A model generated the notes under the pieces. That model saw only the letters and a program-made list of their open reading frames with translations, was not told the origin of the DNA and did no database searches. A DNA stretch of 60,778 nt, filler included, from Sluysia triapertura (Eukaryota), in the NCBI GenBank assembly GCA_046118255.1. It is 4 parts of 4 records of this genome, joined end to end, with 100 filler letters (N's around TTAATTAATTAA, not from the genome) between each part and the next. Parts side by side here need not be neighbours in the genome. Positions count along the whole stretch, not along the records: positions 48,356 to 60,778 come from JBJNIA010111090.1; 3 more parts are not named here. One strand, given 5' to 3'. Each line of letters starts with the position of its first letter. The stretch's first letter is position 1. This document shows positions 1 through 60,778 of this stretch, one piece after another. The position numbers were made by a program, and so were the translations under genes.

Positions 1-134
1 TTAGGGTTTATGAAGGTTTCTCTTATGATTGTAATTTGTTTGTTGAAATATTTAATGCATGAATGTGGTGAAGTGTTCGAAGTAAAATGTGGAAGTTTAT
101 TATGAGATAGATGGTTGAGATATTAGTTGATTTG

Positions 135-770
135 TTAGTGTTTATAAGTTAGTGAGGTGTTGTGATTGTAGAATGTTGTTTTATGATGTCTATAGTGATG
201 TAATTGTAAAATAAAAGTATGACTATTAAGAGAATTGTATTTTAATGAAATTAGATTTATAATTGTTAGGTTTAAATCTAAGTTAATGTTATTATAATTA
301 TGAATATGAGCAATATTACGATAATCATTGTAATAAATACCAATGGATGAGTAGTATCTAGATGATTTAGGTAGGTACGTTTCGTGTAGTATTAAATGGT
401 CACTTTTACTAATATTACATTTTGGTATATACATTTTGTTTGATACTAAATGTTCATTATTACTAATATTACTACTAAGTCTTTTGTCTAAATCGTGATC
501 AAATATATGATCTTTATAGTTGTCACGATGTGAAGTAATTCGTTTAAAATCTTAAGCAAATTCAATTCGTGAAGAAAATACATCTAAATCATTACCATAT
601 CGATTACGTACATCTTGAGCATAACGTTTATCATCAAAAACTACAAAAATAAAAAGTGGTTCATTAAGAATTTTAATATCTATAAATAAAAGCTTAAAAC
701 ACCAAAAATGTTTGTTAAATTCTGATACTGAACAATCTGTTGTCATGAAGACATAATAACTGTTAAGATT
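135..770 (-). pseudogene. Decayed intronless SR-protein (SRSF1/SRSF9-like) RRM fragment with a low-complexity tail
   Basis: ORF 552-746 (TTDCSVSEFNKHF..DIKI..FIFVVFDDKRYAQDVRNRYGNDLDVFSSRIEFA) resembles the SRSF RRM (FAFVEFDDPRDAEDAV.GRDGYDFDG.RLRVEF). It is followed by a stop and a His/Asn/Tyr-rich tail. No introns are visible. Confidence 0.55.
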
Positions 771-3284
771 AGGTTAAAAACCGTCTTTTGTAGCTCCTGA
801 TCCGATGTACCATTCGCTCTAGAAGTCATTAAATAAAATGGCTACTGAAAAATTTATTAAGCATGCCCAATCAATAAATTAAAAAGTAATAATAATTATT
901 ATTATTAAATTTTAACTATTAAGTGTATCACTACATACGCTATACTCGGAGAAAAGTATTTCATAACCATGTATATAGCTTTATGAGAAAATTTTTGAAA
1001 ACTAAAGAATGAACAACGTTTCAACCGTTATTAACATAATTCGTTTTGAATGAGAAACTTTAACATGTAAAATAAAGTTCTAACAATTAATCCTTTGAAC
1101 TATCAAAACAATAATTGTCTTTTAGTAGCGCATATATATTTAACAATTCTGTATTTACGATAAAAATACTAATAGATTCAATATTTGTTACAAACAATTG
1201 AATAAACCAAACTGGTTTAAAAATCGAGTCGAAACCCGATATATTATGTGAATTGTTTGCTTAAATAATTTCAAATTTTTATCGTGAGATAATATACGAG
1301 AATAGTTAGGTGAAAGTGCAGCTCCACAGTTTGATCGCACATTTCGACCAAAATATAAAATATTATTAATAAATTTCAAAAACATTTTCCTTATAATGAC
1401 TCATTTAAAGGAACAGCTTGAGATACTATAGTAAATCTCAATTTAACTAATTCATGGTCATCATTCAAGAATTTAGGTTCAATTAAACTAAAATCATCTT
1501 TAATTTGTACTAATATCACTTGAATTCGATTCATTGTAAAATTGGTCTCCATTACTGTTGTTATTTCATCATCTTCTACTAATGCATCTAAATTACGCAC
1601 AAGATCAATCACAATGACAAGGCTTTAGTTTCGTGACTTCCTGATATACTGCCAGACAATCGTATCATATAATGATCAACAGGAAACATCTTTTTCAAAA
1701 TTATTCAATCTTCATCATCATCAAACAGCAGCTTAATATTTTTACTTATTTCAAAATTTTTTAAAAAGTGATTTAACAGTTTAACATTTAAACAAATAAT
1801 TTCAAAAATAAAGATCTATATACAAATTAATATGATACAGCAAGAAACAATAAACGCACAATTTAACCTATATGCACCACAATCAGCGTTTCTTGTTAAT
1901 ATACAATTTTCGAAAATACACAAATTACAGAAATATATTTTTTTGATAATAATAATTTTAATATTTGAATTTTTAAGAACAAATAAATAACAAATACAAC
2001 TTATAATGCTATTACTAGTAGTAATAAACAGTATATCACAAAACGGAATAAACTGTATAATATTAAACATGATCAATTTTTTTTGAAAATAGAATCTTTT
2101 AAGATTATATCTACAAAATGTGTGCATAACTTACTACGAATTGTTCGAATTTCTACATCATTATGATTACTACTTGACGTGTTGACTCGATTGAGTTATT
2201 TATTTTTAGATAAAATCATTGATAATTTAACTTCTTCAATCTTTTTATTCATTTCTCGTTCTAAAGCAACCGCAAATTTTAAAACGGGAACTGATTCAAT
2301 AATTGAAATTAAATAAAACACCCAATAAGGAGATTGAATACGATCTTTAACAATAGTAATATGACTAAATGCACTTTAACAACAATATATTGTAAAAAGA
2401 TAAAAATGAAAAATTGGGAGACACAAGAAAAAGGACAGTGCGTCATAATGATGACAAGATGACAATGAGCGTTGTGTTTAAAGAGAATTTTAAGCATTAA
2501 CAATTTTGTAAGGATGAGTGGTGTGGTCTTGTAATTGATATGGGTAAAATTTGTTATTATGTATTTTTTTGTGATGAGATTTATATGATGATTGTTATAA
2601 TTTGTGTAGTGTGTGGGTAGGTAGTTGATCTACTGAGAATGTGCTTCAGTCATACTTTCCACTTAAAATTATACTTCGTCCACTCGCATTAATATTGTTT
2701 TTTCTTTTTCATATTAAGAACTGGCAGTCACATCTTTCACTTGACCAACAGCTTTTTAGTTTCTGTTTGTGAAATAATTGAATTTTCAATGCTTGTTGAG
2801 TAATGCACATAACAAGCCAAATCACTAAAGCTGAAATTTCTATAAATTTATATTAAAAATGTAATATAAAGAAAAATATTATTATCTTATGACGCAACTA
2901 CAATGAATTTTAATTTTTAGGATGAAATAATAAATATTTTGATCAAATCTCTACACCTATTAATCCTTTAATGCAAAGTACGCAACAAATCATAACCAAA
3001 AATCTCTTACGTCATTGTAAATTGTTGAAAAAACTTTATAACAAGGTAGGCAATTATTATTGTGAAGTTGTTTACCAATTGTAACTTAAATTGATTTGAT
3101 TTAAATTGAATTATTAAGTTTAGAATACTTACTTTGTCATGTGATATTATTTAATAAACGTGACATATGGTTATTAATGAATGTTTATAATTTACACTTA
3201 AGTTTTTAAATTAGCTTTAGAACACATGTTTATTCATATTTTTAATCGATATTTAAATTATATTAATTAATAATAAGATATATT

Positions 3285-4926: not shown

Positions 4927-5202
4927 TTTAGTGGATTGGATAACAAATGTACATTATATCCATTGATAAATGATGATGATCCAGTTTTGAAGAAGCGCCT
5001 TGTTGCTACTCACACATCATATTTAGCTGCTTGTCAATTTAATTTAAGTGAACACCAGCTCCTCACGGGTAGTGGAGACAGTACTTGTGTATTATGGGAT
5101 GTGGAATCTGGTCAGATGATACAAAGCTTCCATGGGCATGCTGGTGATGTTATGTGTCTGGACTTATCGCCATCGGAATTAGGAAGAGTATTTATTTCCG
5201 GG
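4429..5202 (+). CDS. GNB5: G protein beta-5 subunit, 5' part only (exons 4429-4540, 4578-4756, 4791-4867, 4932-5202)
   Basis: Motifs [56 protein letters not shown] and [27 protein letters not shown] match Gbeta5. GT-AG introns of 37, 34 and 64 nt keep the frame. A GTAAGT donor follows at 5203, but the remaining WD repeats were not found. Confidence 0.92.
4871..4923. repeat. (TTA)n microsatellite in GNB5 intron 3
   Basis: Directly visible trinucleotide run. Confidence 0.95.
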
Positions 5203-6744
5203 GTAAGTGATAATTAAATTAGATAAATTAGATGATAATTAAATAAGTGATGATAATTAGACATCAGGACTTTAACTCTTAATGCGTATACCTCAACGTA
5301 TCTTTTCCATTTCCACTATTAAATTTACATTAGAAAAGTTATTCGATTTATGAATATGTTTGAAGCATTTATTTTCATTAGTCAGTTATATATCTTAAAA
5401 TTTCTTGTAGAAAACCGAAGTGGGCACAATTTTTTCAATAAACTTGTAATGACACTTAGAAAACGATGACTATGTTATGTGAAAAATTGAACTAAATAGA
5501 GCCACACATTACAAAAACCACATGCATCAAAAAATGCATGCATATTTACAATTTAGTTTTAGTGAATCTTTTCTTCATTAGAATATTTAAATATGAAAAC
5601 TATGCCGTGTTTGGGAACATTAAAAGACTATAGAGCAAATTGTTTGTTACTTGTGAGAATAATTTTTATTTATTGTCTTTTAATTAATGCTTTTAAAAGT
5701 TAACATCCCAATCCTACATATGTGCATATTTTTCTTTTATATACTTATGTACTGTTATTATTCGATTTAACTTCGATTTGATTAATATTCATGTTGAATA
5801 TGTAAATATTAATATTGTTCCAGTATATTTTATTAAGTTAACGTAAATGTAGCATGATATAATGTATTATCTATGCAAATAATATGGTGCAATGTAATAG
5901 TTAATAATATATTCAATTAAATAATTAATATGAATATTTTTGTAAATCAATCAGTTATTCGATTGGTGATTTAAAAATTAATAAATTATGTGCGTGCTTT
6001 GAATTTCTGACTCTACTGGAAGTATTTTCAATCTTATACTTATACTTATAAAGGTTTAATGAACACATTGTACAACTTTAATTACACGATATAAATAATT
6101 ATCAACTTTAACCACACTTAAAACCTTAATTATACTTTAAATAAAATATAATATAAATATAATGTAATATAATAAAATATAATGTAATATAATCAATGAT
6201 CAATGATTAATAAATCGTAATTGTTTTGTCTATCTATTAAATGTTAGAATGGGTGTGTTTGTATTCGGTTCATGGTTGCTTGTTCTATGCTTGCAAAGGG
6301 CTTTAGTGGGCTTATAATATAATATAATACATAATATATAATTTAACTAGGTCAATTGATAAATTCTTTTAGTGATTAATAACTTGGCTTAAACCATAAT
6401 ACGTAATGTTATCGTTTCTTTAGAGTTAAATTTTTCTTTTCGCAAAATCAATGTATAAAATTGTTTACAATTTTGAGTATGATTTAACGGTTTCGCTTTC
6501 AGAAACCTACCTTATGATACAAGAAACAAACTAATTATTATTGTAATTATCTGCACAATTTGAATTTCAAATTCTGAACAATGAAAATTCTTCTTACAAA
6601 ATTACCGTAATACTAAAATGAAAGTTTAACTGAAGAATTCTTTTTACGAAAATAGAAGTTACTGTTACAACTTTTTTCTGTTTTTTTAATTGTCAATTTT
6701 ATTAAGTTTCAATCTAGTTTTATCTAACTCATTTATTTTTCGGA

Positions 6745-48355: not shown

Positions 48356-48419
<64 letters not shown>

Positions 48420-48432
48420 AATACTAATAATA
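48356..48432. repeat. (TAA)n microsatellite at the contig start
   Basis: Directly visible trinucleotide run. Confidence 0.95.
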
Positions 48433-51230
48433 ATGTTAATATTAATAATAACATGCAGTATGTGTTATGATTAATCTCACATCTTAATTCATAGACGGTT
48501 TTAGATTTTAATTCTGCTCGAAAGTTATTCTTTCACTGATAATGTTAAATTTGAAGACTATTAAATTCTCTTCCATAATAAAATTTTAACGTAAAAACCG
48601 ATAGCTTTATTTATATTTCTTTAATTGTTTACTGTTATTATAAATGTTAACTTTATATTTATAAATTACTTCAAAGTTTATTCTCCAAAACTTTACTGAC
48701 TAAGCTTTAAATCTTAGTTATTAATCTAATGATTCTTGATCTAATTTAAATTCTCTTTATAACTTTAACTTAAATGTGCTACCTAATTTACGTAATGCCT
48801 TTCATAAATTTAACTTGATGAGTGTGAGTTCAATACTCGTTTCTGTTCTTACAGATGGAAGTGCTAGTTGAAATCTTATAAACATAAACTTTTATAATCT
48901 TATTTTTCGATCCATTACTGATCACTAGATAAAGTTTTATTCAATTATAAATATATTAGGCGACATACTAGAGCTTGTAAACAGTGTACAATTGTGGTTA
49001 TAATAATGACAAAAACAGGGAAAATTAATTTTATATTTTGTGCAAGAAGATAAAATTCACTTACGTTATCTCTGGACTGTCGTGAGTTGGCTAAAATTCA
49101 AATAGTAGAATTCTCTAACAATAAGTTCTCGATCTGTAATAAAAATAAGTAAATGAGTTCTTGGTCAGCAGCAATTAAATTCTGGATAAACAATAATAAT
49201 GTCAATGAATTATTGGTACTTCTATTTATACTGTGTATCATATTAAAATAAATTACTTATTAGTGATTTATGTTACAATTCTACCAAAATTATGTGCATT
49301 GTATTTTATTTAAAACTTTATATTCCTGCATATTAATTTATTTCAATATTAAATGCTACTAAATTATTTTATAGAAATTATAAACATATTTTTATAAGCA
49401 TATTTTACATTTCTGCATATTAATTTATTTCAATATTATAAATTTAGACTACTAATTTATTCAGTAAATTATTTATGCAAGATAATTGTTAATGTGGTTG
49501 TTTATTTGGATTTTAATCTGCGTGAATCCCTTCGGATATTAAGCTTACTCAATTAAGGGCTAATGCGTAAGTGACGCATAAAATAGTTAATTGGAGGTTT
49601 TATAAAGAAACGTCGATAACCTAGCTAAAGAGCTAATTGCAGTGGTGTCAGAAGTTTAGTTTCTGTCTTATTGCAATGACATGTTGAAATTATGTAATTT
49701 ACGTCAGATCTCGAAAGGGAAATCTGCAATTATTTGATTTTAATATTACAATATCTATTTGTCAATAATTTTGAGGTAATTTTACAACTATGTAATATTT
49801 TAGTTACGAAAAGAAAAAATAAATAATTTTTATGATAAGTAAAATATATTTTGACAAAACCTTGAAATATTGTTACAATAAAATATGCTCTAATGATAGT
49901 ATTACTATAATATTTATATAAGAATTACAAAAATTATGCGCTTGGTAATAATTTTGTTTTTTTAATTGAGTTTAGAAGTAAGTTACATCAACCCTTTAAA
50001 CGTTTGAAGAAAAATTGTAAAATATTTTTCATCAATTAAAAATTGTATAACTTAAAATAAAATAGACTAACGGAACTATTAAAAAAATAATTGTCTTGCG
50101 AGTTAAGATTTGAATTGTCTGTACTGCTAAAGGTGTCACTAAACTGTTACTGTTGTCTGCTAATGCTATATTAATATTACTAAAAATCTTTTTGTGTGAA
50201 TTTAAGCATTTTTGATATTGCCTGTAGATACTAAAATTTATGAAGGTCAAATTTGTAAACTCATTTAGTTTAAACAAAAATTTTAAATTATTTTAAAAAT
50301 TAAATTGTTCCGTTTAATCATATTTATAGAAATATTAATAAAAAACAAAATATACTAGCATAAAATTAAAATGTCCGAAATATTAAAAACAATCATAAGA
50401 TTTTTCAAAATAGTGATTTAAGAATAGCTTAAAATGTTATTTTATACAAAATGATTTCATATAAAATCACATACGTACGTACACAAGTCTTTATTATTTT
50501 TGACGTATGTACACACATAAATGATTAAATGATTAATTGAACACATATGATTAGATGATTAGTTGACATTTATTACAAGTAAATTCACGCATTAAAAAAT
50601 TATACTTATATTTGTCTGGGCTCGTAATTTATTTACAGAATCAACATTGGCTGATTTATTTATTTACTTTAATAATTTATTATTTTATTTTATTTATTAA
50701 TTTAATTTAATTTAATTTAAATTCTTTAATCCACAAAACACAATTCTTAAACAAAAAAATTTTTATTCAATAAAAACATTTAATTATTTAACAATATAAA
50801 CGAAAAACTTAGCAACATTAGATGAAATTAGAAATTAGCATTACTTTTAGAATCATAGTTTGATCCATTATGATCTCAAAATTTTGTCTTTGCCAACACA
50901 TTATGTTTTACATATTTCCTATAAATCAGTATCCACTTTTGCCATAGCGTCGTGATAATGTAAGACGTTTTAATTATTGAAACTGTCTTTTGAGAACGTA
51001 GTTAAAATTAAAGCTTTTTACTAATTGTTTTTTCAAGATTTCAAGCTATCATTTGTATTAGTAACATTATTAGTGACATTTTGAGTTTTAATTCTTTAAT
51101 CGATTAAATTGTTTAAGCTGTTCCATTCGGTCTACTTTATCAAAATAAGTATAAATACAGATTGTATGACTTAATAACTGTTAGGTTGTCATCACAATTT
51201 TTTAAAATAATCAAAAATGTTATAATACAC

Positions 51231-52451
51231 CTATCCCCCTATGTGCGTAGGGGTTTTTGTTTGTTCATCATTCTTGGATTTTAACTTTTTAATCTTATCT
51301 TTAGTATGCAATGATTTATTGTTATCAATTACTTGCTTAAGGCACTTGAAATTAAAGTTTTGTGAATAAAAGTCAATATAAGACATCGAAATTCTATTAC
51401 TAGAACTTTTAAATGTATCTACAATTAGTTTATCAATACATGACCTGTCCGATAACGGTCTGATTCGTTCAATAGCGTTGTAGTGTCCGAATGTTATAGC
51501 TAAACACGATCCAGATCCTCGATTCCGAGCTTGAATTGTCCCGTCAGCATTCCCGCGGACAATAATACAGGAAGTTTCATTACTCTCAGTAAAACATCGT
51601 ATTTGAAAAGAAATAATAAGGCTTAACGGTAAAGAAGAATAACCAGAACAACTAACAGTTCGTAAACTGTTTTTAGACGACCATATTCCAAGAATATAGC
51701 CGAAACTAAATGACACAATTTTAAAGTTACTAATTACATTAGATGACATAATTTTAAACTTGTTATTTATATTAAGAGATATAATTTTAAATTCATTATG
51801 TATATTATAATATATATCAACAGAGAGACATAACTTCTTCTCCCTATTTTCTTCAACTTCGTCTTTACCGTCACCTTTAATATTTTTGAATTGTGCAGAT
51901 TTAAAATATTCGATTTCAAAACTTTTAAAACTTGGTGATACTGTAATCATTCTCGTCAGAATGAATTGAATTGCATAATTGTTATCACGATCTCTCATAT
52001 AATAAATCTGCACAAATTCATTTAATAAATTAGTTTTAAAATCAGCATTTAAGGCACATCCAACATTTCTGGATAGTGACTTAGAAAATTTTTTAAATCT
52101 TTTTGGCTTTTCTTCTAAGTCATTATCAATTAAATCAAACGACGCATGATAATTACTTACGTTTAAATTAAATTCAGACATGTAAATTAAAAATTTCTCA
52201 AGACTAAACTTGTTACATAACAGTAGGTATAAATGATCTTTGCCGTGATACTTTATCATCATTTGATAGTCACATTTATTAACATATTTATTTAAATGAG
52301 GTTTCATATCGCTGTCTTTGTATTTACATGGTTTGTAATGTAGCATTTCAATGGAATCATCCTCAACACTAAAATCGCACTCGTCTGTACGTAAATCTGG
52401 AATAATAGCTTGGAAATCCTCACCGACTTTAAAACTCATGTAAGAATTCAT
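51231..52451 (-). CDS. 406-aa intronless chimeric ORF: degenerate ELM2 + SANT-like region fused to beta-TrCP/FBXW-like WD40 repeats
   Basis: FKVGEDFQAIIPDL..EMLHYKP is ELM2-like. EEKPKRFKKFSK..LNEFVQIYYM is SANT-like. KIVSFSFGYILGIWS and IIVRGNADGTIQARNRGSGSCLAITFGHYNAIERIR resemble [36 protein letters not shown]. Whether the ORF is functional is unknown. Confidence 0.6.
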   Translation of the reverse strand: MNSYMSFKVGEDFQAIIPDLRTDECDFSVEDDSIEMLHYKPCKYKDSDMKPHLNKYVNKCDYQMMIKYHGKDHLYLLLCNKFSLEKFLIYMSEFNLNVSNYHASFDLIDNDLEEKPKRFKKFSKSLSRNVGCALNADFKTNLLNEFVQIYYMRDRDNNYAIQFILTRMITVSPSFKSFEIEYFKSAQFKNIKGDGKDEVEENREKKLCLSVDIYYNIHNEFKIISLNINNKFKIMSSNVISNFKIVSFSFGYILGIWSSKNSLRTVSCSGYSSLPLSLIISFQIRCFTESNETSCIIVRGNADGTIQARNRGSGSCLAITFGHYNAIERIRPLSDRSCIDKLIVDTFKSSSNRISMSYIDFYSQNFNFKCLKQVIDNNKSLHTKDKIKKLKSKNDEQTKTPTHIGG

Positions 52452-52498
52452 AAAACATTCAAGGTTTGCTAAAGTGCACTTGGATGCGTTAAATTTAT

Positions 52499-52798
52499 CT
52501 ATTTAAATTGGTTATTTAAAATTAAACATTTACCTTTGACAATTAACAAGTATCGATACACTTGTGTCATTCTATCGCTTACACGAAACACATCAACTAT
52601 AGCTCCAACAATGAGCTCTGGTAAATTCATGTCGCTTTCTAAAGGAGTATAATGGACAAAATGAATTGGAACATTACTTATAATAATACCAAAATCTTTA
52701 TATTTGACTCGTATAAAATCATCATAAATTTCTTGCAACTGAACTAGGTAATTTCCTCCATTTTCGCTTCGGATTTCTATAGTTTTTAAACCGGTCAT
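52499..52798 (-). pseudogene. Intronless FMR1/FXR N-terminal Agenet (Tudor) domain fragment
   Basis: IEIRSENGGNYLVQLQEIYDDFIRVKYKD..VPIHFVHYTP..VDVF aligns by eye with FMRP [39 protein letters not shown]..VEVY. No KH domains follow. Confidence 0.7.
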
Positions 52799-53372
52799 TC
52801 GTACAAAATGATTTTTAAAATTTTTTAATTTTTGTGCCATATAGTAATAATAAAACAAAAATAATAATAAAAATAAAATAATAAGATTAATAATAAAAAT
52901 TAGTAAAATAAAATAATAAAAATAATAATAAAATAATAATAAAAATAATCAAAATAAAAATAATAAAATAATAATAAAATTAATAAAAATAAAAATAATA
53001 AATTAATAATGATAATGGTGATAATAATATCTATATAGAGGTCACATCGAATTTTCTGAAACAACTTTTAACAGCCATAATTTAATTTATTGTGCTTAAT
53101 ATATATTTTACATAATAATAATTATTGCTCAGTACAGAAATGAAAAAACCCCAAATAAAAATGATATTGTCAAAAAAATAAAAATTTGAAAATAAGCTAA
53201 AATTTATTTTTGACTGCGTTGCAATAATTTACATTTAGTAATTAAATTACATATACAAAATTTTGAACATTTAAAAAAATATGATTTAATACAAATGTCT
53301 AAAGATAGAGTTCTTCTTCTTTTTTACTTTGTTATCGTGACACCGTTTTCTCTAGAAAAACGAATTTAAAAA

Positions 53373-53588
53373 TTAATTTTCATTATTTTCTATTAATTTC
53401 CTTTCGTCCAACTCCTCATGCGTAAAATCTCCACTCCTTAAGTCATTTGTAACACATTTTGAATATAATTTCACTTTATCTGTGGATGGATCATTTGTAT
53501 CTCCAGCTGAAAATCTGGGAAAAAATTCTTGAAAGCATTTATCATAAGATTCCTTCGATGTTTGACACTCCGGATAAATACATTAGAT
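53373..53588 (-). pseudogene. TRIAP1/Mdm35-like twin CX9C protein pseudogene
   Basis: The frame reads I*CIYPECQTSKESYDKCFQEFFPRFSAGDTNDPSTDKVKLYSKCVTNDL, matching TRIAP1 (C..MKREYDQCF..WF..KFLKGD..DPC.DLFK.YQ.CV). The start is lost, codon 2 is a stop and the third Cys is Ser. Confidence 0.8.
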
Positions 53589-54329
53589 ATAAATATCAAT
53601 AAGTTAGATTAGTGGCGGTAAAATGTCATCGTTATCATTCCTATAGTTGTTGTTATTATCACTTTTTATGAACATTTTCTTCTTCTACATCCAAAAGTGT
53701 CGATGGCCATACAGATCTGTAAAATCTATCATTTGATATAGCTGATTCGGTTGCATTCGTTTGCTTGTTAGCCATCATTTTAAAATTATTTATAAAAGCT
53801 TTAAAATTACAGTAATAAATATAATAAAAAAGGTAGTGTTGTAGTGATGATGAGTTGGCAATAGGCGTTATGTATAAAAAATGTTAACAAAGGATTTTAA
53901 TTAGAAAAATTTTAATAAAAGGATTTTATTAAGCGTTTGTGATTTACCGGGGGTAAAGTCTGATACTGCAGATGTTGATATGATTTGTGTTTGTGATGTA
54001 GTTGATGTAATTGATGGTGATGATGAATAAGATGTATGATATATGTTGAAGTGTGACACCACAAGTTATTAATTGATAATCATTATATAACAATAATGAC
54101 TATAATTATTATATATATTTTAATGCGATCTGAATTGTAATAATAATAGCGGTAGTTCATGATAATAAGATGCGATGATCATGTTTGTTTTTTGAATGAG
54201 TTTAGTAGTTTGTTTAATAGTCTGTGTACATGTGAGTGCTTTTATGTGATGAAGTGTGATGAATTCCCTACACTTCTCTTGCTTTTATTGGCAACCAATG
54301 TAATTCCTTAAGAAAAGTTGATCTTCCCA

Positions 54330-56430
54330 CTTGGAAAAGTAGTCTTGCTGTTTGATTAATTATTAATTTTAATTTTTTCAATTTTCTGTCTGAAGTTGAA
54401 TGCAATTTACCATTGTTAAAATATGTTGTTATCAATGAATGAACAATTAGTGTAACTGTTTCTTTATTAATAAATTTTCTGATATTTGATATATTTTAAT
54501 TGATATTTACACCTTTTAACAATACAATTAATATTTTATTCCATGTTCATTTTTGAATCCATATAACAATCTATATTTTATATTTTTGGTTTCGTATTTA
54601 GTGTTTACCACTTACAATTAATTTTGTGTCGTTTATTTTGGCATTTTGACTATTTTTAATACTGAATATTATAAATTTTGATTTTTTTCATTGATTTTCA
54701 AGTATTTCCAAATCATTTTATCACTTTAGGTACTAGTACTTCTGTTCTTTGAATAGTATTTTCTGTTATTTATTTGCACATCATCAGCATATATATGGTA
54801 TTTAAATCCATATGATTCGATTATAATTGAAAAATCATTGACATATATTATAAACAATAATAGAGCAAGTACTGATCTCCGAGGAAGTCCATGCTTTACA
54901 CATACCTCATTTAACTTCACATTATTCAATAAAATGTATTGCCTTCTTTCTTTTTAAGTATGATTCAAACCATTTTATTGCACTAAATGAGAGACACATT
55001 CTTTGGAGATCACAAAGTCATATTTCATGGTCAACTATATCAAAAGCAGCAGACATCTAACAAAACCATCAAAACACATTTATGATTGAAACAATTTAAA
55101 TTATAATTTATTCTTAAAATAGCCGTTTCTTTTTAGTGGTAGATTCTGTAAGCTGATTGATACATTGTAAGAAGTTTATTTTCATCTAAGAACTTTGACA
55201 ATTGTTGTAAAACTGCTTTTTCAATCAATTTTGATAAGTGTGTTACATTTGATACGGGTCTATAATTATTCAAAAGCAATGTCACCATGTTTCATATGAC
55301 GTAATACGACGGATACTTTTTCACTTGATGGAAATTTTGTACTTTATAATGAATCATTAATAATTTTCAATAAAGCCCAAATAACTTTATTTAAAATTGA
55401 ATTATTTTTTATAAGTTTGGTTGGTCAATAGAGCTTTTTTTTGACATTTCTGTGATAATATTTTATTTATTTGTTCTTTTTCTTTTGCATTTCTAATTTA
55501 ATATTTGATTTATTAATGCTATTTCGTACATTTTACACTTTCTGTTTGACGTAATTTTATCATTTTCAAAATGATTTCCATTTTGTTTACCAAATAATTT
55601 ATTTAATAATTTATAAATACCTTTAATATTTGATTTGTTGACTTCAAACAACTTATTATAAATATCCACTTTTTTCTTTTTAATATCTTGGAATAAGATG
55701 TTACGGTATTTCTTCATTCTTTCTTTGTTTCATCAGTTTTTTTACAGCTCATTATTCATAATTCAGTAATTGCAGAATTAAACCAAAATTTCTCAGTAAC
55801 ACGCATCTTTCATTTTTTTAAAGGTGTATGCTTATTTAAATAAAAGAATAATGTTTTGTATAAAGCGTTTAATGTATCTATATCGTCTGTAAAATTTATT
55901 TTTTTTCAATTCAAATTTGCTCTTCAATATCAATTTATATCAATTTAATGATAAGATATATTTAATAGTTCATTCACTTTTATATCAGTAACGATATTAC
56001 TATCAATATTGGTTATTAATAAATCTGATATATTTTCACATTTATGAGTTAAATTGAATGTATTTAGTAGTTTGATGAATGTTTTACATTCTTCATTCAT
56101 TTTTATATTAAAATCTCTTGTTATTAAAACTTTGGCTTTTTCCGAAATAATGTCCAAATTATCATAAAATTCATCTAAAAATTCTTTAATCGAATTACTT
56201 GGTGGTCAATATATAGCAATTAATATTGATTTATTTGTTTCAGTAATATTTAATTCTATATTTTAAATGGAACAATATCAACTAATTTGCCACCCATTCG
56301 ATTTACCACCATCATTTGATACTTCTCTGTATTTATGAAAAAATAAATATTATTTAGAGGAAATAATGAATTAAATATTTTATCATCTTTGATCTAAGTT
56401 TCTATCAAACAAAGTATGTCATGCTATTTT
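54330..56430 (-). mobile_element. Decayed L2/CR1-type LINE ORF2 (APE endonuclease + reverse transcriptase)
   Basis: In order on the minus strand: IAIY*PP, LITRDFNI, NYRPVSN..SKLIEK, YQSAYR, SAAFDIVDH, GLPRRSVL.LLFIIYVND, YADDVQI. Confidence 0.9.
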
Positions 56431-57848
56431 CATAGATGATCTCAATAATTTCCACAATTTCTGTGAAAAATTATTACAAATTGCATTATCTTGGTGGTGT
56501 TCAGTGCAAGTAGAAAACTAATCTTAAGGCCAACACACCATTTAAATTCTATTGTCATTTACGATAGTGGATAACTGAAGCATTTTCTAATAATTATGTA
56601 AAATTATACAAAAATGCATTTGAATTGGTTTTAATAGATTACAAGTCTCGATTAGTGTAAATGGCAAAAATTTTGATGTTTGCAGTTAAATTTTAAAATT
56701 TTAATAGTCTGAGTATATTGTAAAGTCATTAGAAAAATAATGAACTTATTAATAAACTTAATAATAACTTTATATTATTACGTAGTAACTAGTTTTTTGT
56801 ACTTTAAAATAACTTATACTAATGTAATTAAATAATTTGTTTTTATATCAAATTAAAACACAGAATTTATTTTACAATTTATTATACATTAAGGTTTTTA
56901 AAGGTTTTCTAAAGAACAAACATGGTTTATTTATTTGAGTAAATAAAAACTTGGTCATAAAACAGTATCAGAAACAGAAAGAGTGCCTTTTCTGGCTTAG
57001 AAGTAAGTGATATAGCCGTAGGTCGATAGTTTGTAAGAATTGAAGATAGTAATGTTGACCTTATAAATAAGAGCTGAATTATTTTTATACTATTGTAATT
57101 AATATATGATTCTTTGAAATGAATTTAAAAAATTATCCAATTAATTCGAGAATTTTCAGCATATTTTAATACTTTATCAGAATCATATTAAAGAAATTGG
57201 TATGATATAAAAATGGGCGAATGGACACCATTCGAACTAAGTGATTTTCAAAATATTTCCTGAATTAAATAGATATAATAAAGCGAATTATATGCAATAA
57301 AAACACTCTGCACGAAATTAATGAAATTAATGAACAAAAAGTAATACTCACTGCATGGTGATGCATATAGGATATTATCAATTTTAATGATTGAGAAAGT
57401 GATGAATCTATTTGGCCAGGTATTAAAAGAATTAGAAAAAGTTATCAATAACGTGCTCGTCATTGATTAGAAGAAAATGATCTGCTTTACTACGTGACAA
57501 TCAACAGTCACTTGCACATATTGCAGAAACTGGATTACTAAGTCCCATCACCCTTCATGTATCCCTGACATAGCCTAATCTTAACATTTATATAAACATT
57601 TGAATCACTTTATTGAAAAAAGGTCGGGAAATTATCAAGTAATGTGTTAATAAGTTCTTTGATTTCAAATGTGTGACTTAGAAATATATATACGATATAA
57701 AATCAGATGATGCTATTTTGATTATTAAATTTATTTTGATTCTGCATGTCTTATTTGGTCAATTCATATAGGATAACGTAATATTAATATTTTAATAATT
57801 CCTCTGTATAATTATTGTTACTTTTATAAAATAAATGGATTTCTTCAG

Positions 57849-60651
57849 GAAAAAATATTAGCGACCATAACCAATTACAGGATGTTGACCAATCACCATC
57901 CCCGCAACATCAAAAAATTAATGAAAATCTAGTTTCAACTAATTCTAAATTAACTTGTTCAATGCTTGTTAATCCTTCAGAAGTAGATGACGTACATACT
58001 TCAATTTCATCACAAACAAATCCTCAATCAGGTTTATATTTCAAACCTTTACAACAAACACAACAATCACAAGCGCAACATCCAAGTCAACATTCTCAGC
58101 CGTTTCTTAATCGTTTTATTCCTCAACAAAACTTAAATCCTCAACCTGCCCAATCATTCGACATATTTAATGTATCGGAATCTCGTTCACGGACTCAATC
58201 TACGACATCTGTTGGTAGTAACGATTACCATCATCATTATCAACAACCTCATTTTAAATCAAGTTCGAGAGCTTCAAGATCTAGAGACAATAGTGAATCT
58301 ACTAAAGTGGATAATTTGCCAACCCCATCTACAATTCGTAATCATTTAGAACAAACTAATGACGAATCCGATTCAGGTTCTTAATTTGCTAACGCATTTA
58401 TTTACTAAAATATTTAATAGGTAATTGTTATTTATATTGAATGTATACTTAATTATTTTGAAATAATTTACAACACGCACCACAGAAATGCAAAAACAAT
58501 TCGAAAATTAAAGATTAAATCTAAACGTTTTTCATTTTATAAAATAATATTAAGGAAGAAGTTCAAACATAGAGCTGATGAGTTGCACACATGAAAATGC
58601 GTACGAAAAAAAGTGGCGTACTTACAATTTTATAATTGTTAAATTTATAAATTTAATAAAGTTTTTTGTAATTAATTCTTTATAAAAACTTAAATGTCTT
58701 TGAACACTTTATTGTGTCAGTAGATTTATATATGCTTATGATAAATGTATTCTGTATGTTTACAATCAATGTAATTTTCTTTATGATTTCTTATTAGTGC
58801 TATCTTATATTCCTTTATCAATGTGTTCACTTTATTATAATTTTTAAAATTCAAACTCTTTAATGTTAAAAGTTACGGAAGTATTAAAGTTTGATTATAT
58901 TTGTTTTAAAATAGTTTCATTGTAAATAAGCTCACAAATGCAAATTTAATTATTAGCAAAAATAAAAGAGATAAAACTTTTTAATTATCTTATGAAGCGA
59001 CTACAAAATACTGCCGGTTTAGTATATCTCCAAACTATTTATAAAAGCACCAAAGGCCTCTAATGGATTACCATAAAATTCTATAAGTAATCCGCAAGAA
59101 TTTTTTTGTTTTCTATATAATTTGCACTTTAAATAATTTTAACAGAATGTGTCATAAGTATTTGCAGAGCAAAATAAATGAGACATGATGTAATTATTTT
59201 TATAATATAAATACATCATATTTTGTAATATTCATGAAACACAGTCCAATAAACAAATATAACATAATTTTTTAAATGATTTAAAATACTTCATTCTATT
59301 TCCTTTTTAGCAATAATAGGTATAAATAACGATTTCTTTGATTATTTACACATTCAGATATAATTTCACTAAATTTAATAACAGTTTAAATTGCAAGTCG
59401 TAGATTTTTGAATTATTTAATATAATTAATTATATTAATGTTAATTATATTATATTAATATATTTAATTATATTAATGCGGTGGCCAATTCAAAACATCT
59501 GTATTATTTTTCATGAAAATTGTTGTTGCTTTGATCGTATAACCAAGAACTTTGTAATGTGATTAATATTATAGAGTTTAAAGGTAGTGATAGATGAAGT
59601 TCAGCAGCTTTATTGTAAGAAATAATTTTTAATTCACTAATTTTGTTTACCTATTTTATAATTGCACTTATAATATTTATATTCATATTAGCTGAAATTA
59701 CTAAAAGTCAGAAAGGTTATTAAAAAAGTGATTAAGAATTAATGTGGTCTTTCACGTCTGTCGAAGAATGTTAAAAGCAAAAATGTTGGAAGGCATTTAA
59801 AACAAATATTTTATAAAAAATTATCAAAATTTTATCAATCGAAATATATTGTGAGGTTAACTTATTAAGTAGATTTAACATCAATAATATAATTGTAATT
59901 CTTTTGTTTTAGATCAAGTTATTCAGAAATCAGAAATATCCAATTCACAATCCCCTTCCACAGAATCACAAACTCAAATTAGTACTACTTCCAATCGTAA
60001 TACAGGAAGTTGGTTTTCAAGATTTCTACCGATACGAAGCAAAGAGGTTTACTTACCTGATGATACAGATAAAAAAATATATTTTGATGAAAAAGCTAAT
60101 TGCTGGCGCGACAGTAGCAAGACAGAGCAAGTAGGAGGAAATATTAAGCCTCCAGTCATGGCCCCACCTCCAGCAAACATTGACAATATAAGTTTAAGTG
60201 TTTCATCACCTCTATTGACAACTTCTAGTCGGTATGCAGTTCCAGGAGCTATGAAGACAATGAAAACAAATGCAAGTAGTGAGGCACTAGCGGATGTTAT
60301 GAAAATATTACCTGGTCACAGTAGTCATCAACTTAACAATGTGAGAGAATAAATTTTGAACTTAAAGCATAATTCTAATTGGAATTATTTCAGTGATAAT
60401 AAATGAATTAATTTTTCAACATAGTTGTTTTATTTATAATAAAAAGTAGTTTGTTTATTTAAATAATTATTTAGATGACAAATCAGACAGAAAATAATAA
60501 TATTAAAGAAAGTAATATAAATATGTTAAATAGAAAAACTTCGTATGTATACCCTAATTCAATTTCTTCGGTATCTAGTCCAAATTCAGGATTTAATCAA
60601 TCGAATAATTACAATATTTCAATTGAATCACATGGTCATTACCCACAGTAG
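57849..60651 (+). CDS. SEC16: Sec16 (ER exit-site protein) C-terminal exons (57849-58376, 59913-60340, 60475-60651), partial
   Basis: GSWFSRFLP..EVYLPDDTDKKIYFDEKANCWRD..APPP matches the Sec16 C-terminal motif (W....K...LPDD....I.WDE....W). Flanks are S/Q/P-rich and splice phases are consistent. The central conserved domain is not in this contig. Confidence 0.78.
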
Positions 60652-60778
60652 TGGTATTTACTACCCTCGTCAATATCAGTAGCACATGGATCAACACAAA
60701 ATGCAGGGCAGTACGAGTCTTTCTATACTAAACAAAACTAATAAATCATTGAGAATACTATTTTCATGCACATGCAAA

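What the first reader, a model, noticed from the sequence alone, without database searches (positions are those of the whole stretch)
51231..53780. Train of intronless fragments from four unrelated host genes (TRIAP1, FMR1 Agenet, ELM2/SANT, beta-TrCP-like WD40), partly fused in one 406-aa ORF
Seen: within ~2.4 kb on the minus strand lie a dead TRIAP1/Mdm35 copy, an FMRP Agenet domain without KH domains, and a 1.2-kb uninterrupted ORF joining ELM2-SANT to WD40 repeats through a triple 11-aa repeat (FKIISLNINNK/FKIMSSNVISN/FKIVSF). All are co-oriented and intronless, while real genes here have tiny introns. Known: human FMR1 has an intron after codon 17, inside the region that is contiguous here, and I know no family with an ELM2-SANT-WD40 architecture. 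Inference: these are mRNA-derived pieces concatenated by a gene-capturing element (RT template switching, 3' transduction by the adjacent co-oriented LINE, or Helitron/Pack-type capture). The long open frame in very AT-rich DNA hints at a new chimeric gene or a recent origin.
Basis: partly seen in the sequence, partly recalled or inferred. Interest (0 to 1): 0.85.

Follow-up and report, generated by a model that had tools for sequence, protein, structure and literature searches.

The report
Multi-copy chimeric ORF from host-gene fragments
This stretch is one decaying copy of a repeat present tens to over a hundred times in the genome. Its long open reading frame is stitched together from pieces of unrelated host genes (a CoREST-like ELM2-SANT module and a single WD40 blade), so it looks like gene fragments that were captured and amplified, though how they spread is not settled.

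Summary

**Domain calls**
- The TRIAP1/Mdm35 segment is real: Pfam E 5.7e-10, human TRIAP1 E 4e-6. It is broken: no in-frame ATG, and the third Cys is Ser.
- The 406-aa ORF is real (no stop in 423 codons, P about 4e-17).
- Its N-terminus is a CoREST-like ELM2 followed by a degenerate SANT.
- A 33-nt repeat (about 3 copies) follows.
- Only one WD40 unit is detectable, not a propeller.
- The FMRP "Agenet" call stays weak (E about 0.6, no Pfam hit).

**New evidence: the stretch is repeated**
- In contigs of a run that holds this exact locus, the unique flank has depth 18.
- The ORF region sums to 1,300-3,000, with copies 85-99% alike.
- The TRIAP1 part sums to about 100-140.
- The chimeric junctions also occur in two other runs, so this is not a misassembly and not a set of single-copy genes.
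- This copy differs from most others by 9 synonymous and 18 non-synonymous changes, which fits neutral decay.
- Most length differences between copies keep the reading frame.

**Mechanism**
The mechanism is unresolved. 3' transduction by the neighbouring LINE, a Helitron and a TIR element are not supported. A 5'-truncation-like depth gradient hints at retroposition.

No RNA data or parental genes could be reached.

The parts
53662..53778 (-). Short ORF of 39 aa that starts exactly at the upstream edge of the 'cargo'. No relatives were found.
   Evidence: The joints place the cargo edge at 53778/53779.
53376..53582 (-). TRIAP1/Mdm35-like pseudogene segment. It is intronless, the ATG at 53583-53581 is one base out of frame, and the third Cys of the twin CX9C motif is Ser. 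It is present in a few copies.
   Evidence: Pfam PF05254 E 5.7e-10. Human TRIAP1 E 4e-6 with DPSTD aligned to DPCTD. Depth is about 100-140 against 18.
52841..53029 (.). A/T-only low-complexity spacer between the TRIAP1 part and the ORF119/ORF406 repeat unit.
   Evidence: periods 3, 23, 35, 55, 58. Reads were skipped here.
52502..52858 (-). ORF119, the putative FMRP-like Agenet module. This is weak and unconfirmed. The Met at 52795 aligns with FMRP Met1.
   Evidence: FMRP residues 5-51 at E 0.6-1.4. No hit for the second half. No Pfam hit. The AF2 model was unusable. Depth is 180-1,330.
52499..52533 (-). 35-nt GT..AG stretch that would join ORF119 to the ORF406 frame in phase. It is either a tiny intron or a chance match. 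The two frames hand over at an A-run at 52504-52502.
   Evidence: Sequence. No length variant at this site was listed among the copies. The only clear host intron here is 133 nt.
51234..52451 (-). 406-aa chimeric ORF, the core of the repeat family.
   Evidence: Depth is 1,300-3,000 against 18.
52167..52436 (-). CoREST-like ELM2 domain (ORF residues about 6-95).
   Evidence: Pfam ELM2 21.9 bits. Profile A1 against RCOR1/RCOR3 gives E 9e-6 to 1e-4. Relative P0002 gives blastp 1e-14.
51957..52103 (-). Degenerate SANT-like segment (ORF residues about 117-165).
   Evidence: Aligned to the SANT part of P0002. The profile hits the SANT of MTA1/RERE at E 0.06-0.4. No Pfam hit.
51710..51816 (-). 33-nt tandem repeat of about 2.5-3 copies (the FKI.S motif three times). 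It links the SANT part and the WD part.
   Evidence: Contigs of three runs cross it (table 8).
51447..51581 (-). Single WD40-like blade (ORF residues about 291-335). Most other copies have W where this copy has R309.
51236..51253 (-). G+C-rich hairpin (6-bp stem, 6-nt loop) overlapping the last codons of the ORF.
   Evidence: Sequence.
51200..51208 (.). 9-nt direct repeat TTTTAAAAT next to the downstream cargo edge. Its partner is at 53778-53786.
   Evidence: chance 0.0015. The cargo-less copies keep both repeats.
53779..54059 (-). Separate repeat 'U' (depth about 5,000-6,700) between the LINE end and the train. In about 3 other copies it is joined directly to 51208-51142.
   Evidence: tables 2 and 5c.
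54060..56205 (-). Decayed non-LTR retrotransposon (RT fragments, many stops and frameshifts), co-oriented with the train. Its last ~150-200 nt are hyper-abundant.
   Evidence: Pfam RVT_1 fragments. Sequence. Depth is 60,000-150,000, with loose ends at 54063/54082.

Best explanation
The stretch 51.14-53.78 kb (minus strand) is one old, neutrally decaying copy of a non-autonomous repeat unit. The unit is built from intronless fragments of unrelated host genes. Its core (about 51,142-52,850) carries a chimeric reading frame: a CoREST-like ELM2 plus degenerate SANT, a 33-nt triplicated linker, one WD40 blade and an unassigned tail. An upstream module faintly resembles the FMRP N-terminus. A TRIAP1 pseudogene lies further upstream.

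**Shown**
- The domain identities, apart from the Agenet call.
- The open frame.
- The multi-copy status.
- The same chimeric junctions in independent read sets.
- Neutral divergence of this copy.

**Inferred**
- The fragments were captured, most likely as cDNA.
- The composite was then amplified, most likely by retroposition in trans with frequent 5' truncation. Copy number rises from the TRIAP1 end (about 5-7x) through ORF119 (10-70x) to ORF406 (130-170x).
- The whole 2.57-kb block sits as one insertion inside another repeat, whose cargo-less copies exist.
- The element encodes no enzyme for its own movement.
- Whether master copies make a protein is open.
For: **Domain identities**
- TRIAP1.
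- ELM2-SANT of CoREST type.
- One WD40 unit.

**Open frame**
- P 4e-17.

**Repeat status**
- A contig identical to 50800-51277 has depth 18.
- Summed depth is 1,300-3,000 over 51142-52623, from many contigs that carry consistent alternative letters.
- Depth is 98-138 over 53080-53535.
- In two other runs the repeat parts are seen, while the unique flank 50800-51141 is absent from one and gives only a single low-depth bin in the other.
- Contigs cross the SANT/repeat/WD junction and the ORF119/ORF406 junction.

**Decay and ancestry**
- 27 sites where most copies differ from this one give 9 synonymous and 18 non-synonymous changes, equal to the neutral expectation for transitions.
- The majority letters restore the W of the WD motif and a D shared with P0002.

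**Insertion as one block**
- Three contigs join 51195-51208 to 53779, skipping the whole train (table 5c).

**No introns in 1.2 kb**
- The neighbouring host gene has introns of 133 nt and more than 1 kb.
Against: - No other copy could be fetched, so ends, target-site duplications and genomic distribution are unknown.
- There is no poly-A, no similarity to the LINE tail, and no TIRs.
- The depth gradient is not monotonic: the last ~230 nt at the 3' end are lower.
- The 9-nt repeats that flank the block are also both present in cargo-less copies, so they are not a clean target-site duplication.
- Four of the five length differences with known size keep the frame (+3; 45-6=39; 293-2=291; +1/-1). 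This hints at selection on the ORF and fits a functional gene family as well.
- Contig depth is only a rough guide to copy number.
- Parental genes were not found, so 'captured fragment' rests on domain logic alone.
Confidence: 0.55

Rival explanations
1. This is a lineage-specific, functional multigene family expanded by DNA-level duplication. The family would be a chromatin protein with a CoREST-like ELM2-SANT and remnants of other domains. This locus would be one dead member, and no mobile element would be involved.
For: - Most length differences between copies keep the reading frame, some in sub-families of about 20 copies.
- The frame is open over 423 codons.
- The majority letters look more canonical than this copy.
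- No transposon hallmarks were found.
Against: - The copy count is high and divergence is wide (85-99%).
- Copy number falls stepwise towards the 5' end.
- The block sits inside another repeat that has cargo-less copies.
- One WD40 blade cannot form a propeller.
- The SANT is degenerate.
- No paralogue or orthologue is present in 5.8 billion predicted proteins.
Confidence: 0.2
2. A DNA transposon of Pack-TIR, Helitron or similar type picked up the fragments and carried them around.
For: - The arrangement is a multi-copy train of co-oriented fragments of unrelated genes.
- Cargo-less short copies of the flanking repeat (U plus the 51142-51208 tail, about 340 nt together) resemble the relation between a MITE and its cargo-bearing version.
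- Pack-TIRs and a young TE-borne protein family are known in animals (PMC8277862).
Against: - No terminal inverted repeats were found at the tested ends.
- There is no 5'-TC / 3'-CTRR with a subterminal hairpin at either cargo edge.
- The fragments have no introns, whereas DNA-level capture normally keeps them.
Confidence: 0.12
3. The adjacent co-oriented LINE read through into downstream DNA and carried the train along (3' transduction). Alternatively, its reverse transcriptase switched templates, starting from the LINE RNA.
For: - The LINE and the train are co-oriented and adjacent.
- The pieces have no introns.
- Chimeras made by template switching, including tripartite ones, are documented (PMC2104539).
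Against: - Most LINE copies continue with a different A/T-rich tail beyond about 54060-54082.
- The LINE end is about 50 times more abundant than the train.
- A different ~280-nt repeat lies between them.
- There is no poly-A or LINE 3' end at the train's 3' end.
- In template-switch chimeras the LINE or SINE part lies at the 3' end, not the 5' end (PMC2104539 abstract).
Confidence: 0.06
4. These are ordinary single-copy, very divergent genes (TRIAP1 and an ELM2-SANT gene with a 35-nt intron) that happen to lie side by side.
For: - A frame-preserving GT..AG stretch of 35 nt lies between ORF119 and ORF406.
- The domain hits are weak, as expected in a fast-evolving lineage.
Against: - Depth is 70-170 times the unique flank, with many divergent contigs.
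- TRIAP1 lacks an in-frame start and one essential Cys.
- The pattern of substitutions is neutral.
Confidence: 0.04

Closest known systems
Chimeric retrogenes made by LINE reverse-transcriptase template switching (bi- and tripartite; PMC2104539)
   Same: Copies of different transcripts are co-oriented, intronless and fused directly. They are sometimes flanked by short direct repeats and lie near LINEs.
   Different: In that system the 3' part is a LINE, SINE or poly-A end, and each chimera is usually single-copy. Here there is no such 3' end, the LINE lies upstream, and the unit is amplified to about 100 copies with an open chimeric frame.
Pack-TIR / Pack-MULE and Helitron gene-fragment capture (PMC8277862 for animals; own knowledge for Helitrons)
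   Same: Trains of fragments of unrelated host genes, multi-copy, sometimes giving a young protein family (Ssk-FB4).
   Different: No TIRs, no target-site duplication of the expected kind and no Helitron termini were found. The fragments here have no introns.
LINE 3' transduction (own knowledge)
   Same: Host sequence lies directly downstream of a co-oriented LINE.
   Different: The LINE consensus ends earlier and continues differently. Copy numbers do not match, and there is no terminal poly-A or target-site duplication.
Macrosatellite or megasatellite retrogene arrays such as D4Z4/DUX4 (own knowledge)
   Same: An intronless ORF, probably derived from cDNA, is carried in a repeat unit present in tens to hundreds of copies.
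   Different: This copy is not in tandem: it has a unique flank on one side and other repeats on the other. No head-to-tail joints were reported.
REST corepressor (CoREST/RCOR) ELM2-SANT module
   Same: The ELM2 region aligns with RCOR1/RCOR3 over about 90 residues, followed by a SANT-like segment in the same order.
   Different: The SANT is degenerate, there is no second SANT or linker, it is fused to a WD40 blade, and it is multi-copy. Binding to HDAC1/2 is untested.

Membership tests
TRIAP1/Mdm35 (Pfam UPF0203, twin CX9C) | Profile match above the curated cut-off | tested here: met
   39.7 bits against 27, E 5.7e-10. Human TRIAP1 E 4e-6.
TRIAP1/Mdm35 (Pfam UPF0203, twin CX9C) | Four cysteines in two CX9C motifs | tested here: not met
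   The third Cys is Ser: DPSTD aligned to DPCTD.
TRIAP1/Mdm35 (Pfam UPF0203, twin CX9C) | Intact frame with a start codon | tested here: not met
   A stop lies directly upstream of the homologous frame, and the nearest ATG (53583-53581) is one base out of frame.
ELM2-SANT corepressors (CoREST/MIER/MTA) | ELM2 domain | tested here: met
   Pfam ELM2 21.9 bits against 21.7. Profile against RCOR1/RCOR3 gives E 9e-6 to 1e-4.
ELM2-SANT corepressors (CoREST/MIER/MTA) | SANT domain directly after ELM2 | tested here: inconclusive
   No Pfam hit. It aligns with the SANT part of P0002. The profile hits the SANT of MTA1/RERE only at E 0.06-0.4.
ELM2-SANT corepressors (CoREST/MIER/MTA) | Binds and activates HDAC1/2 | not testable with these tools
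   This needs biochemistry. The AF2 model was unusable.
FMRP/FXR N-terminal tandem Agenet | Profile or sequence match to both Agenet domains | tested here: inconclusive
   First domain only, E 0.6-1.4 against FMRP residues 5-51. The second half has no FMRP hit. No Pfam hit. The AF2 model had pLDDT 38.
FMRP/FXR N-terminal tandem Agenet | KH domains downstream | tested here: not met
   ELM2 follows directly. No KH hit was found.
WD40 beta-propeller | WD40 repeat signature | tested here: met
   One unit at residues about 291-335. Twelve of the 13 hits in the 1.84-billion library matched that stretch, and the four checked are Pfam WD40 proteins; best E 5.7e-9. Pfam WD40 itself gave no hit.
WD40 beta-propeller | Six to eight blades forming a closed propeller | tested here: not met
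   Only one unit is covered by matches. A few alignments reach residues 250-345.
LINE 3' transduction | Transduced DNA continues directly from the LINE's own 3' end and shares its copies | tested here: not met
   Most LINE copies continue differently beyond 54063/54082. Depth is 150,000 for the LINE end against 5,000 for U and 100-3,000 for the train.
LINE 3' transduction | Poly-A or LINE-type tail plus target-site duplication at the far end | tested here: not met
   No poly-A. No similarity to the LINE tail beyond shuffles.
Helitron | 5'-TC, 3'-CTRR with a subterminal hairpin, insertion between A and T | tested here: not met
   The cargo edges read A|TC... on the plus strand but end in ...TCAT|T. 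The only G+C hairpin (51253-51236) is not followed by CTRR.
Pack-TIR / MITE-type DNA transposon | Terminal inverted repeats and a fixed-length target-site duplication | tested here: not met
   Local alignments of the candidate ends score no better than shuffles.
Template-switch chimeric retrogene | Intronless, co-oriented, directly fused transcript copies | tested here: met
Template-switch chimeric retrogene | Flanking direct repeats and a poly-A or LINE 3' part | tested here: inconclusive
   A 9-nt repeat flanks the block (chance 0.0015), but both copies persist in cargo-less relatives. A 13-nt repeat flanks the core (p about 0.03). There is no poly-A.

The most novel reading that the evidence does not exclude
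The repeat family's master copies are expressed and kept open by selection. Together they would form a young, amplified protein family that joins a histone-reader-like N-terminus and a CoREST-type HDAC-recruiting ELM2-SANT to a WD40 fragment. For example, it could act as a decoy that interferes with host chromatin silencing of the very repeats that carry it.
Probability: 0.12. Interest if true: 0.8.

Novelty: new member of a known kind. Interest (0 to 1): 0.5.

Why it matters
Capture and amplification of host-gene fragments is well known in plants. It is documented far less in animals. A ~100-copy unit that carries an open, in-frame fusion of a corepressor module with pieces of other genes would be a clear animal example of how repeats shuffle domains and seed new genes.

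It also matters for annotation. These copies would otherwise be called as dozens of spurious 'CoREST-like', 'WD40' or 'TRIAP1' genes.

If the family is expressed, it becomes a testable case of a selfish element carrying a chromatin-regulator mimic.

Tried and rejected
**Searches that found nothing**
- The word-indexed protein search with the whole ORF, with its first 130 residues and with P0002 found nothing beyond P0002 itself.
- Exact look-ups of encoding contigs were not on record.
- JGI metagenome and IMG/VR scans found no relative, so a viral origin has no support.
- PHROGs gave only weak hits to ORF119, which I take as compositional. The same holds for Pfam Phage_Gene33, which is below its cut-off.
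- Pfam scans of sub-fragments for SANT, WD40 and Agenet gave nothing.
- PDB searches of the 39-aa ORF, of the C-terminal tail and of ORF406 residues 165-290 (the SANT-WD linker) gave nothing.
- Rfam and tRNA scans gave nothing real.

**Models that failed**
- AlphaFold2 without an alignment gave pLDDT 38 for ORF119 and 33 for ORF406. Both were unusable, so no fold search was run.

**Tests of transposon hallmarks**
- TIRs, LINE-tail sharing and Helitron ends were tested and not found.

**A test I discount**
- The shuffle test of the WD40 match is circular, because the targets had been picked by the query. I give it no weight.

- The joined ORF119+ORF406 model, whether spliced or read through, was not searched or folded.

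**Limits of the read data**
- No RNA runs exist for this stretch.
- Read laying could be called only once, and it gave contigs only.
Full report
**Setting**

The piece (48356-60778) is very A/T-rich, 16-35% G+C in 500-nt windows. All features of the finding lie on the minus strand.

**Check of the four domain calls**

*1. TRIAP1.*
- The open segment 53582-53376 matches Pfam UPF0203 at 39.7 bits (cut-off 27, E 5.7e-10).
- It matches human TRIAP1 in the PDB at E 4e-6, and yeast Mdm35 more weakly.
- It is not intact. A stop lies directly upstream. The nearest ATG (53583-53581) is one base out of frame. The third cysteine of the twin CX9C motif is serine.
- One search lists no length variant between the ATG and the motif in other copies.

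*2. ELM2-SANT.*
- The 406-aa ORF (52451-51234) has Pfam ELM2 at residues 9-56, just over the cut-off.
- An exhaustive phmmer search of 1.84 billion representatives found one relative over residues 6-161. This is P0002, a 199-aa orphan ELM2-SANT-like protein (E 7e-8; blastp 1e-14, 28% identity).
- A profile of the two sequences hits the ELM2 of REST corepressor 1 and 3 (E 9e-6 to 1e-4). It then hits the SANT of MTA1 and RERE (E 0.06-0.4) in the right order.
- So the module is CoREST-like, with a degenerate SANT. Pfam sees no SANT.

*3. WD40.*
- Twelve of the 13 hits (best E 5.7e-9) all align to one stretch of the query, residues about 291-335. The four of them scanned with Pfam are WD40-repeat proteins.
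- FBXW7 and designed WD40 proteins are the best PDB matches.
- This is one blade, or at most traces of its neighbours, not a propeller. Pfam WD40 does not fire.

*4. Agenet.*
- ORF119 (52858-52502) matches FMRP residues 5-51 only at E 0.6-1.4.
- Its second half gives no FMRP hit, and Pfam gives none.
- FMRP Met1 aligns with an internal Met (52795). By eye the similarity can be carried on through the second Agenet domain if the frame change at 52502 is read through. That is my reading, not a test.
- I rate this call as about even.

*Other checks.*
- The 33-nt triple repeat is real (51710-51816).
- The open frame of 423 codons cannot be chance: P is 4e-17, and the longest frame in 2000 shuffles was 150.

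**The decisive new fact: it is a repeat**

No RNA run holds the stretch. I laid the contigs of three DNA-type runs on 50800-54200.

- In run X1 a 583-nt contig is identical to 50800-51277 at depth 18. So this very locus is in that sample, and 18 is the best guide to single-copy depth.
- Summed depth is 18-23 over 50800-51141. It rises to 1,450-3,040 over 51142-52623, then falls to 880 and 180 towards 52851.
- It is 98-138 over most of the TRIAP1 part (53080-53535), rising to 250-590 towards 53763. It is about 5,000-6,700 over 53764-53991, and 62,000-151,000 over 53992-54200.
- Many separate contigs carry the same alternative letters. At 51912, for example, 16 contigs all read A. This is a true family with copies 85-99% alike, not low-complexity noise.
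- Runs X2 and X3 (other organisms or samples) show the repeat parts. The unique flank is absent from X2, and in X3 it gives only one low-depth bin. Their contigs cross the SANT/repeat/WD junction. An X1 contig identical to the window crosses the ORF119/ORF406 junction.
- Hence the chimeric order is not an assembly artefact, and these are not single-copy genes.

**State of this copy**

- At 27 listed sites most copies differ from the window. Nine changes are synonymous and 18 are not. That is exactly the neutral share expected for transitions, about 0.34.
- The majority letters give W for R309, the W of the WD motif. They also give D for H73, as in P0002.
- So this copy is a decaying descendant of a more canonical master.

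**Hints of selection in the family**

- Four of the five length differences between copies whose size is known keep the frame. These are +3; 45 skipped with 6 put in; 293 skipped with 2 put in; and +1/-1 four bases apart. The -16 is the exception.
- Two of the variants are carried at depths equal to about 20 copies.
- P is about 0.045 for four or more of five events in frame. This is suggestive only.

**Anatomy around it**

- The co-oriented LINE (RT fragments) is riddled with stops and frameshifts.
- Most of its relatives continue past 54063-54082 with a different A/T-rich tail (table 7). The LINE therefore ends near 54060.
- The next 280 nt ('U', 53779-54059) are a separate repeat.
- Three X1 contigs of about single-copy depth join U at 53779 to 51195-51208. 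The few letters between are a diverged version of 51196-51210 (table 5c).
- So U and the 67-nt stretch 51142-51208 are contiguous elsewhere. The whole train (51209/10-53778, about 2.57 kb) sits between them as one block. It begins at the ATG of the 39-aa ORF and ends 21-22 nt after the stop of ORF406.
- The block is flanked by TTTTAAAAT (chance 0.0015). The cargo-less copies keep both repeats, so it is not a clean target-site duplication.
- A 13-nt repeat flanks the core (51204-16 and 52942-54, p about 0.03).
- No TIRs, Helitron ends, poly-A or LINE-tail similarity were found.

**Reading**

- Copy number rises along the minus strand from the TRIAP1 end to ORF406. Together with the one-block insertion, the co-orientation and the lack of introns, this fits a composite non-autonomous unit. 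A few copies would be full-length and many would be 5'-truncated, which points to retroposition in trans.
- For comparison, the neighbouring host gene has a 133-nt intron and a longer one.
- The fit is imperfect. The 3'-most 230 nt are at lower depth, and no 3' recognition signal is visible.
- 3' transduction by this LINE is unlikely, for the reasons given above.
- A functional gene family remains a serious rival because of the in-frame length variants.
- The 35-nt GT..AG stretch (52533-52499) would join ORF119 to ORF406 in phase. The two frames hand over at an A-run (52504-52502), and no copy shows a length change there. Whether it is a tiny intron or an old frameshift cannot be told without RNA.

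**Known relatives**

- Template-switch chimeric retrogenes (PMC2104539).
- Animal Pack-TIRs, including a young TE-borne protein family (PMC8277862).
- 3' transduction and macrosatellite retrogenes (own knowledge).

None of their defining end structures was met here. I therefore file the finding as a new member of the general kind 'captured host-gene fragments amplified as a repeat', with the mechanism open.

**Limits**

- No other copy, parental gene or transcript could be fetched.
- Contig depth is only a rough guide to copy number.
- Both AlphaFold models were unusable.
- The joined ORF119+ORF406 model was left unsearched by rule.

Noticed in passing
window 53992-54200 (and on into the LINE 3' UTR up to about 54270): The last ~150-200 nt of the decayed LINE are hyper-abundant in run X1, at summed contig depth 62,000-151,000 against 18 for unique DNA. 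That implies thousands of copies. Most copies continue past 54063-54082 with a different A/T-rich tail.
   Followed up: partly
window 53779-54059 and 51142-51208: A separate repeat ('U', depth about 5,000-6,700) is joined directly to the 67-nt stretch 51142-51208 in about 3 other copies. Together they make a SINE/MITE-sized unit of about 340 nt, which the 2.57-kb train splits here.
   Followed up: partly
window 57830-58381, 59913-60341, 60475-60648 (+): A spliced host gene lies on the plus strand, with Q/N/S-rich exons. It has a clear 133-nt GT..AG intron (60342-60474) and a longer one upstream. No Pfam or PDB match was found. By memory the motif around 60010-60110 resembles a Sec16 C-terminal motif, but this is untested.
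   Followed up: partly
window 51236-51253 (-): A G+C-rich hairpin (6-bp stem CCCCTA/TAGGGG, 6-nt loop) overlaps the last codons of ORF406 in otherwise very A/T-rich DNA. Its function is unknown.
   Followed up: no
window 52638-52678: A 39-nt in-frame deletion inside ORF119 is shared by contigs of all three runs. It therefore marks an old sub-family.
   Followed up: no
window 50465-50526 (-): A weak Rfam mir-3149 match of 32 bits, against a gathering score of 100. It is almost certainly chance in A/T-rich DNA.
   Followed up: no
window 48356-48451: A (TAA)32 microsatellite lies at the edge of the piece.
   Followed up: no
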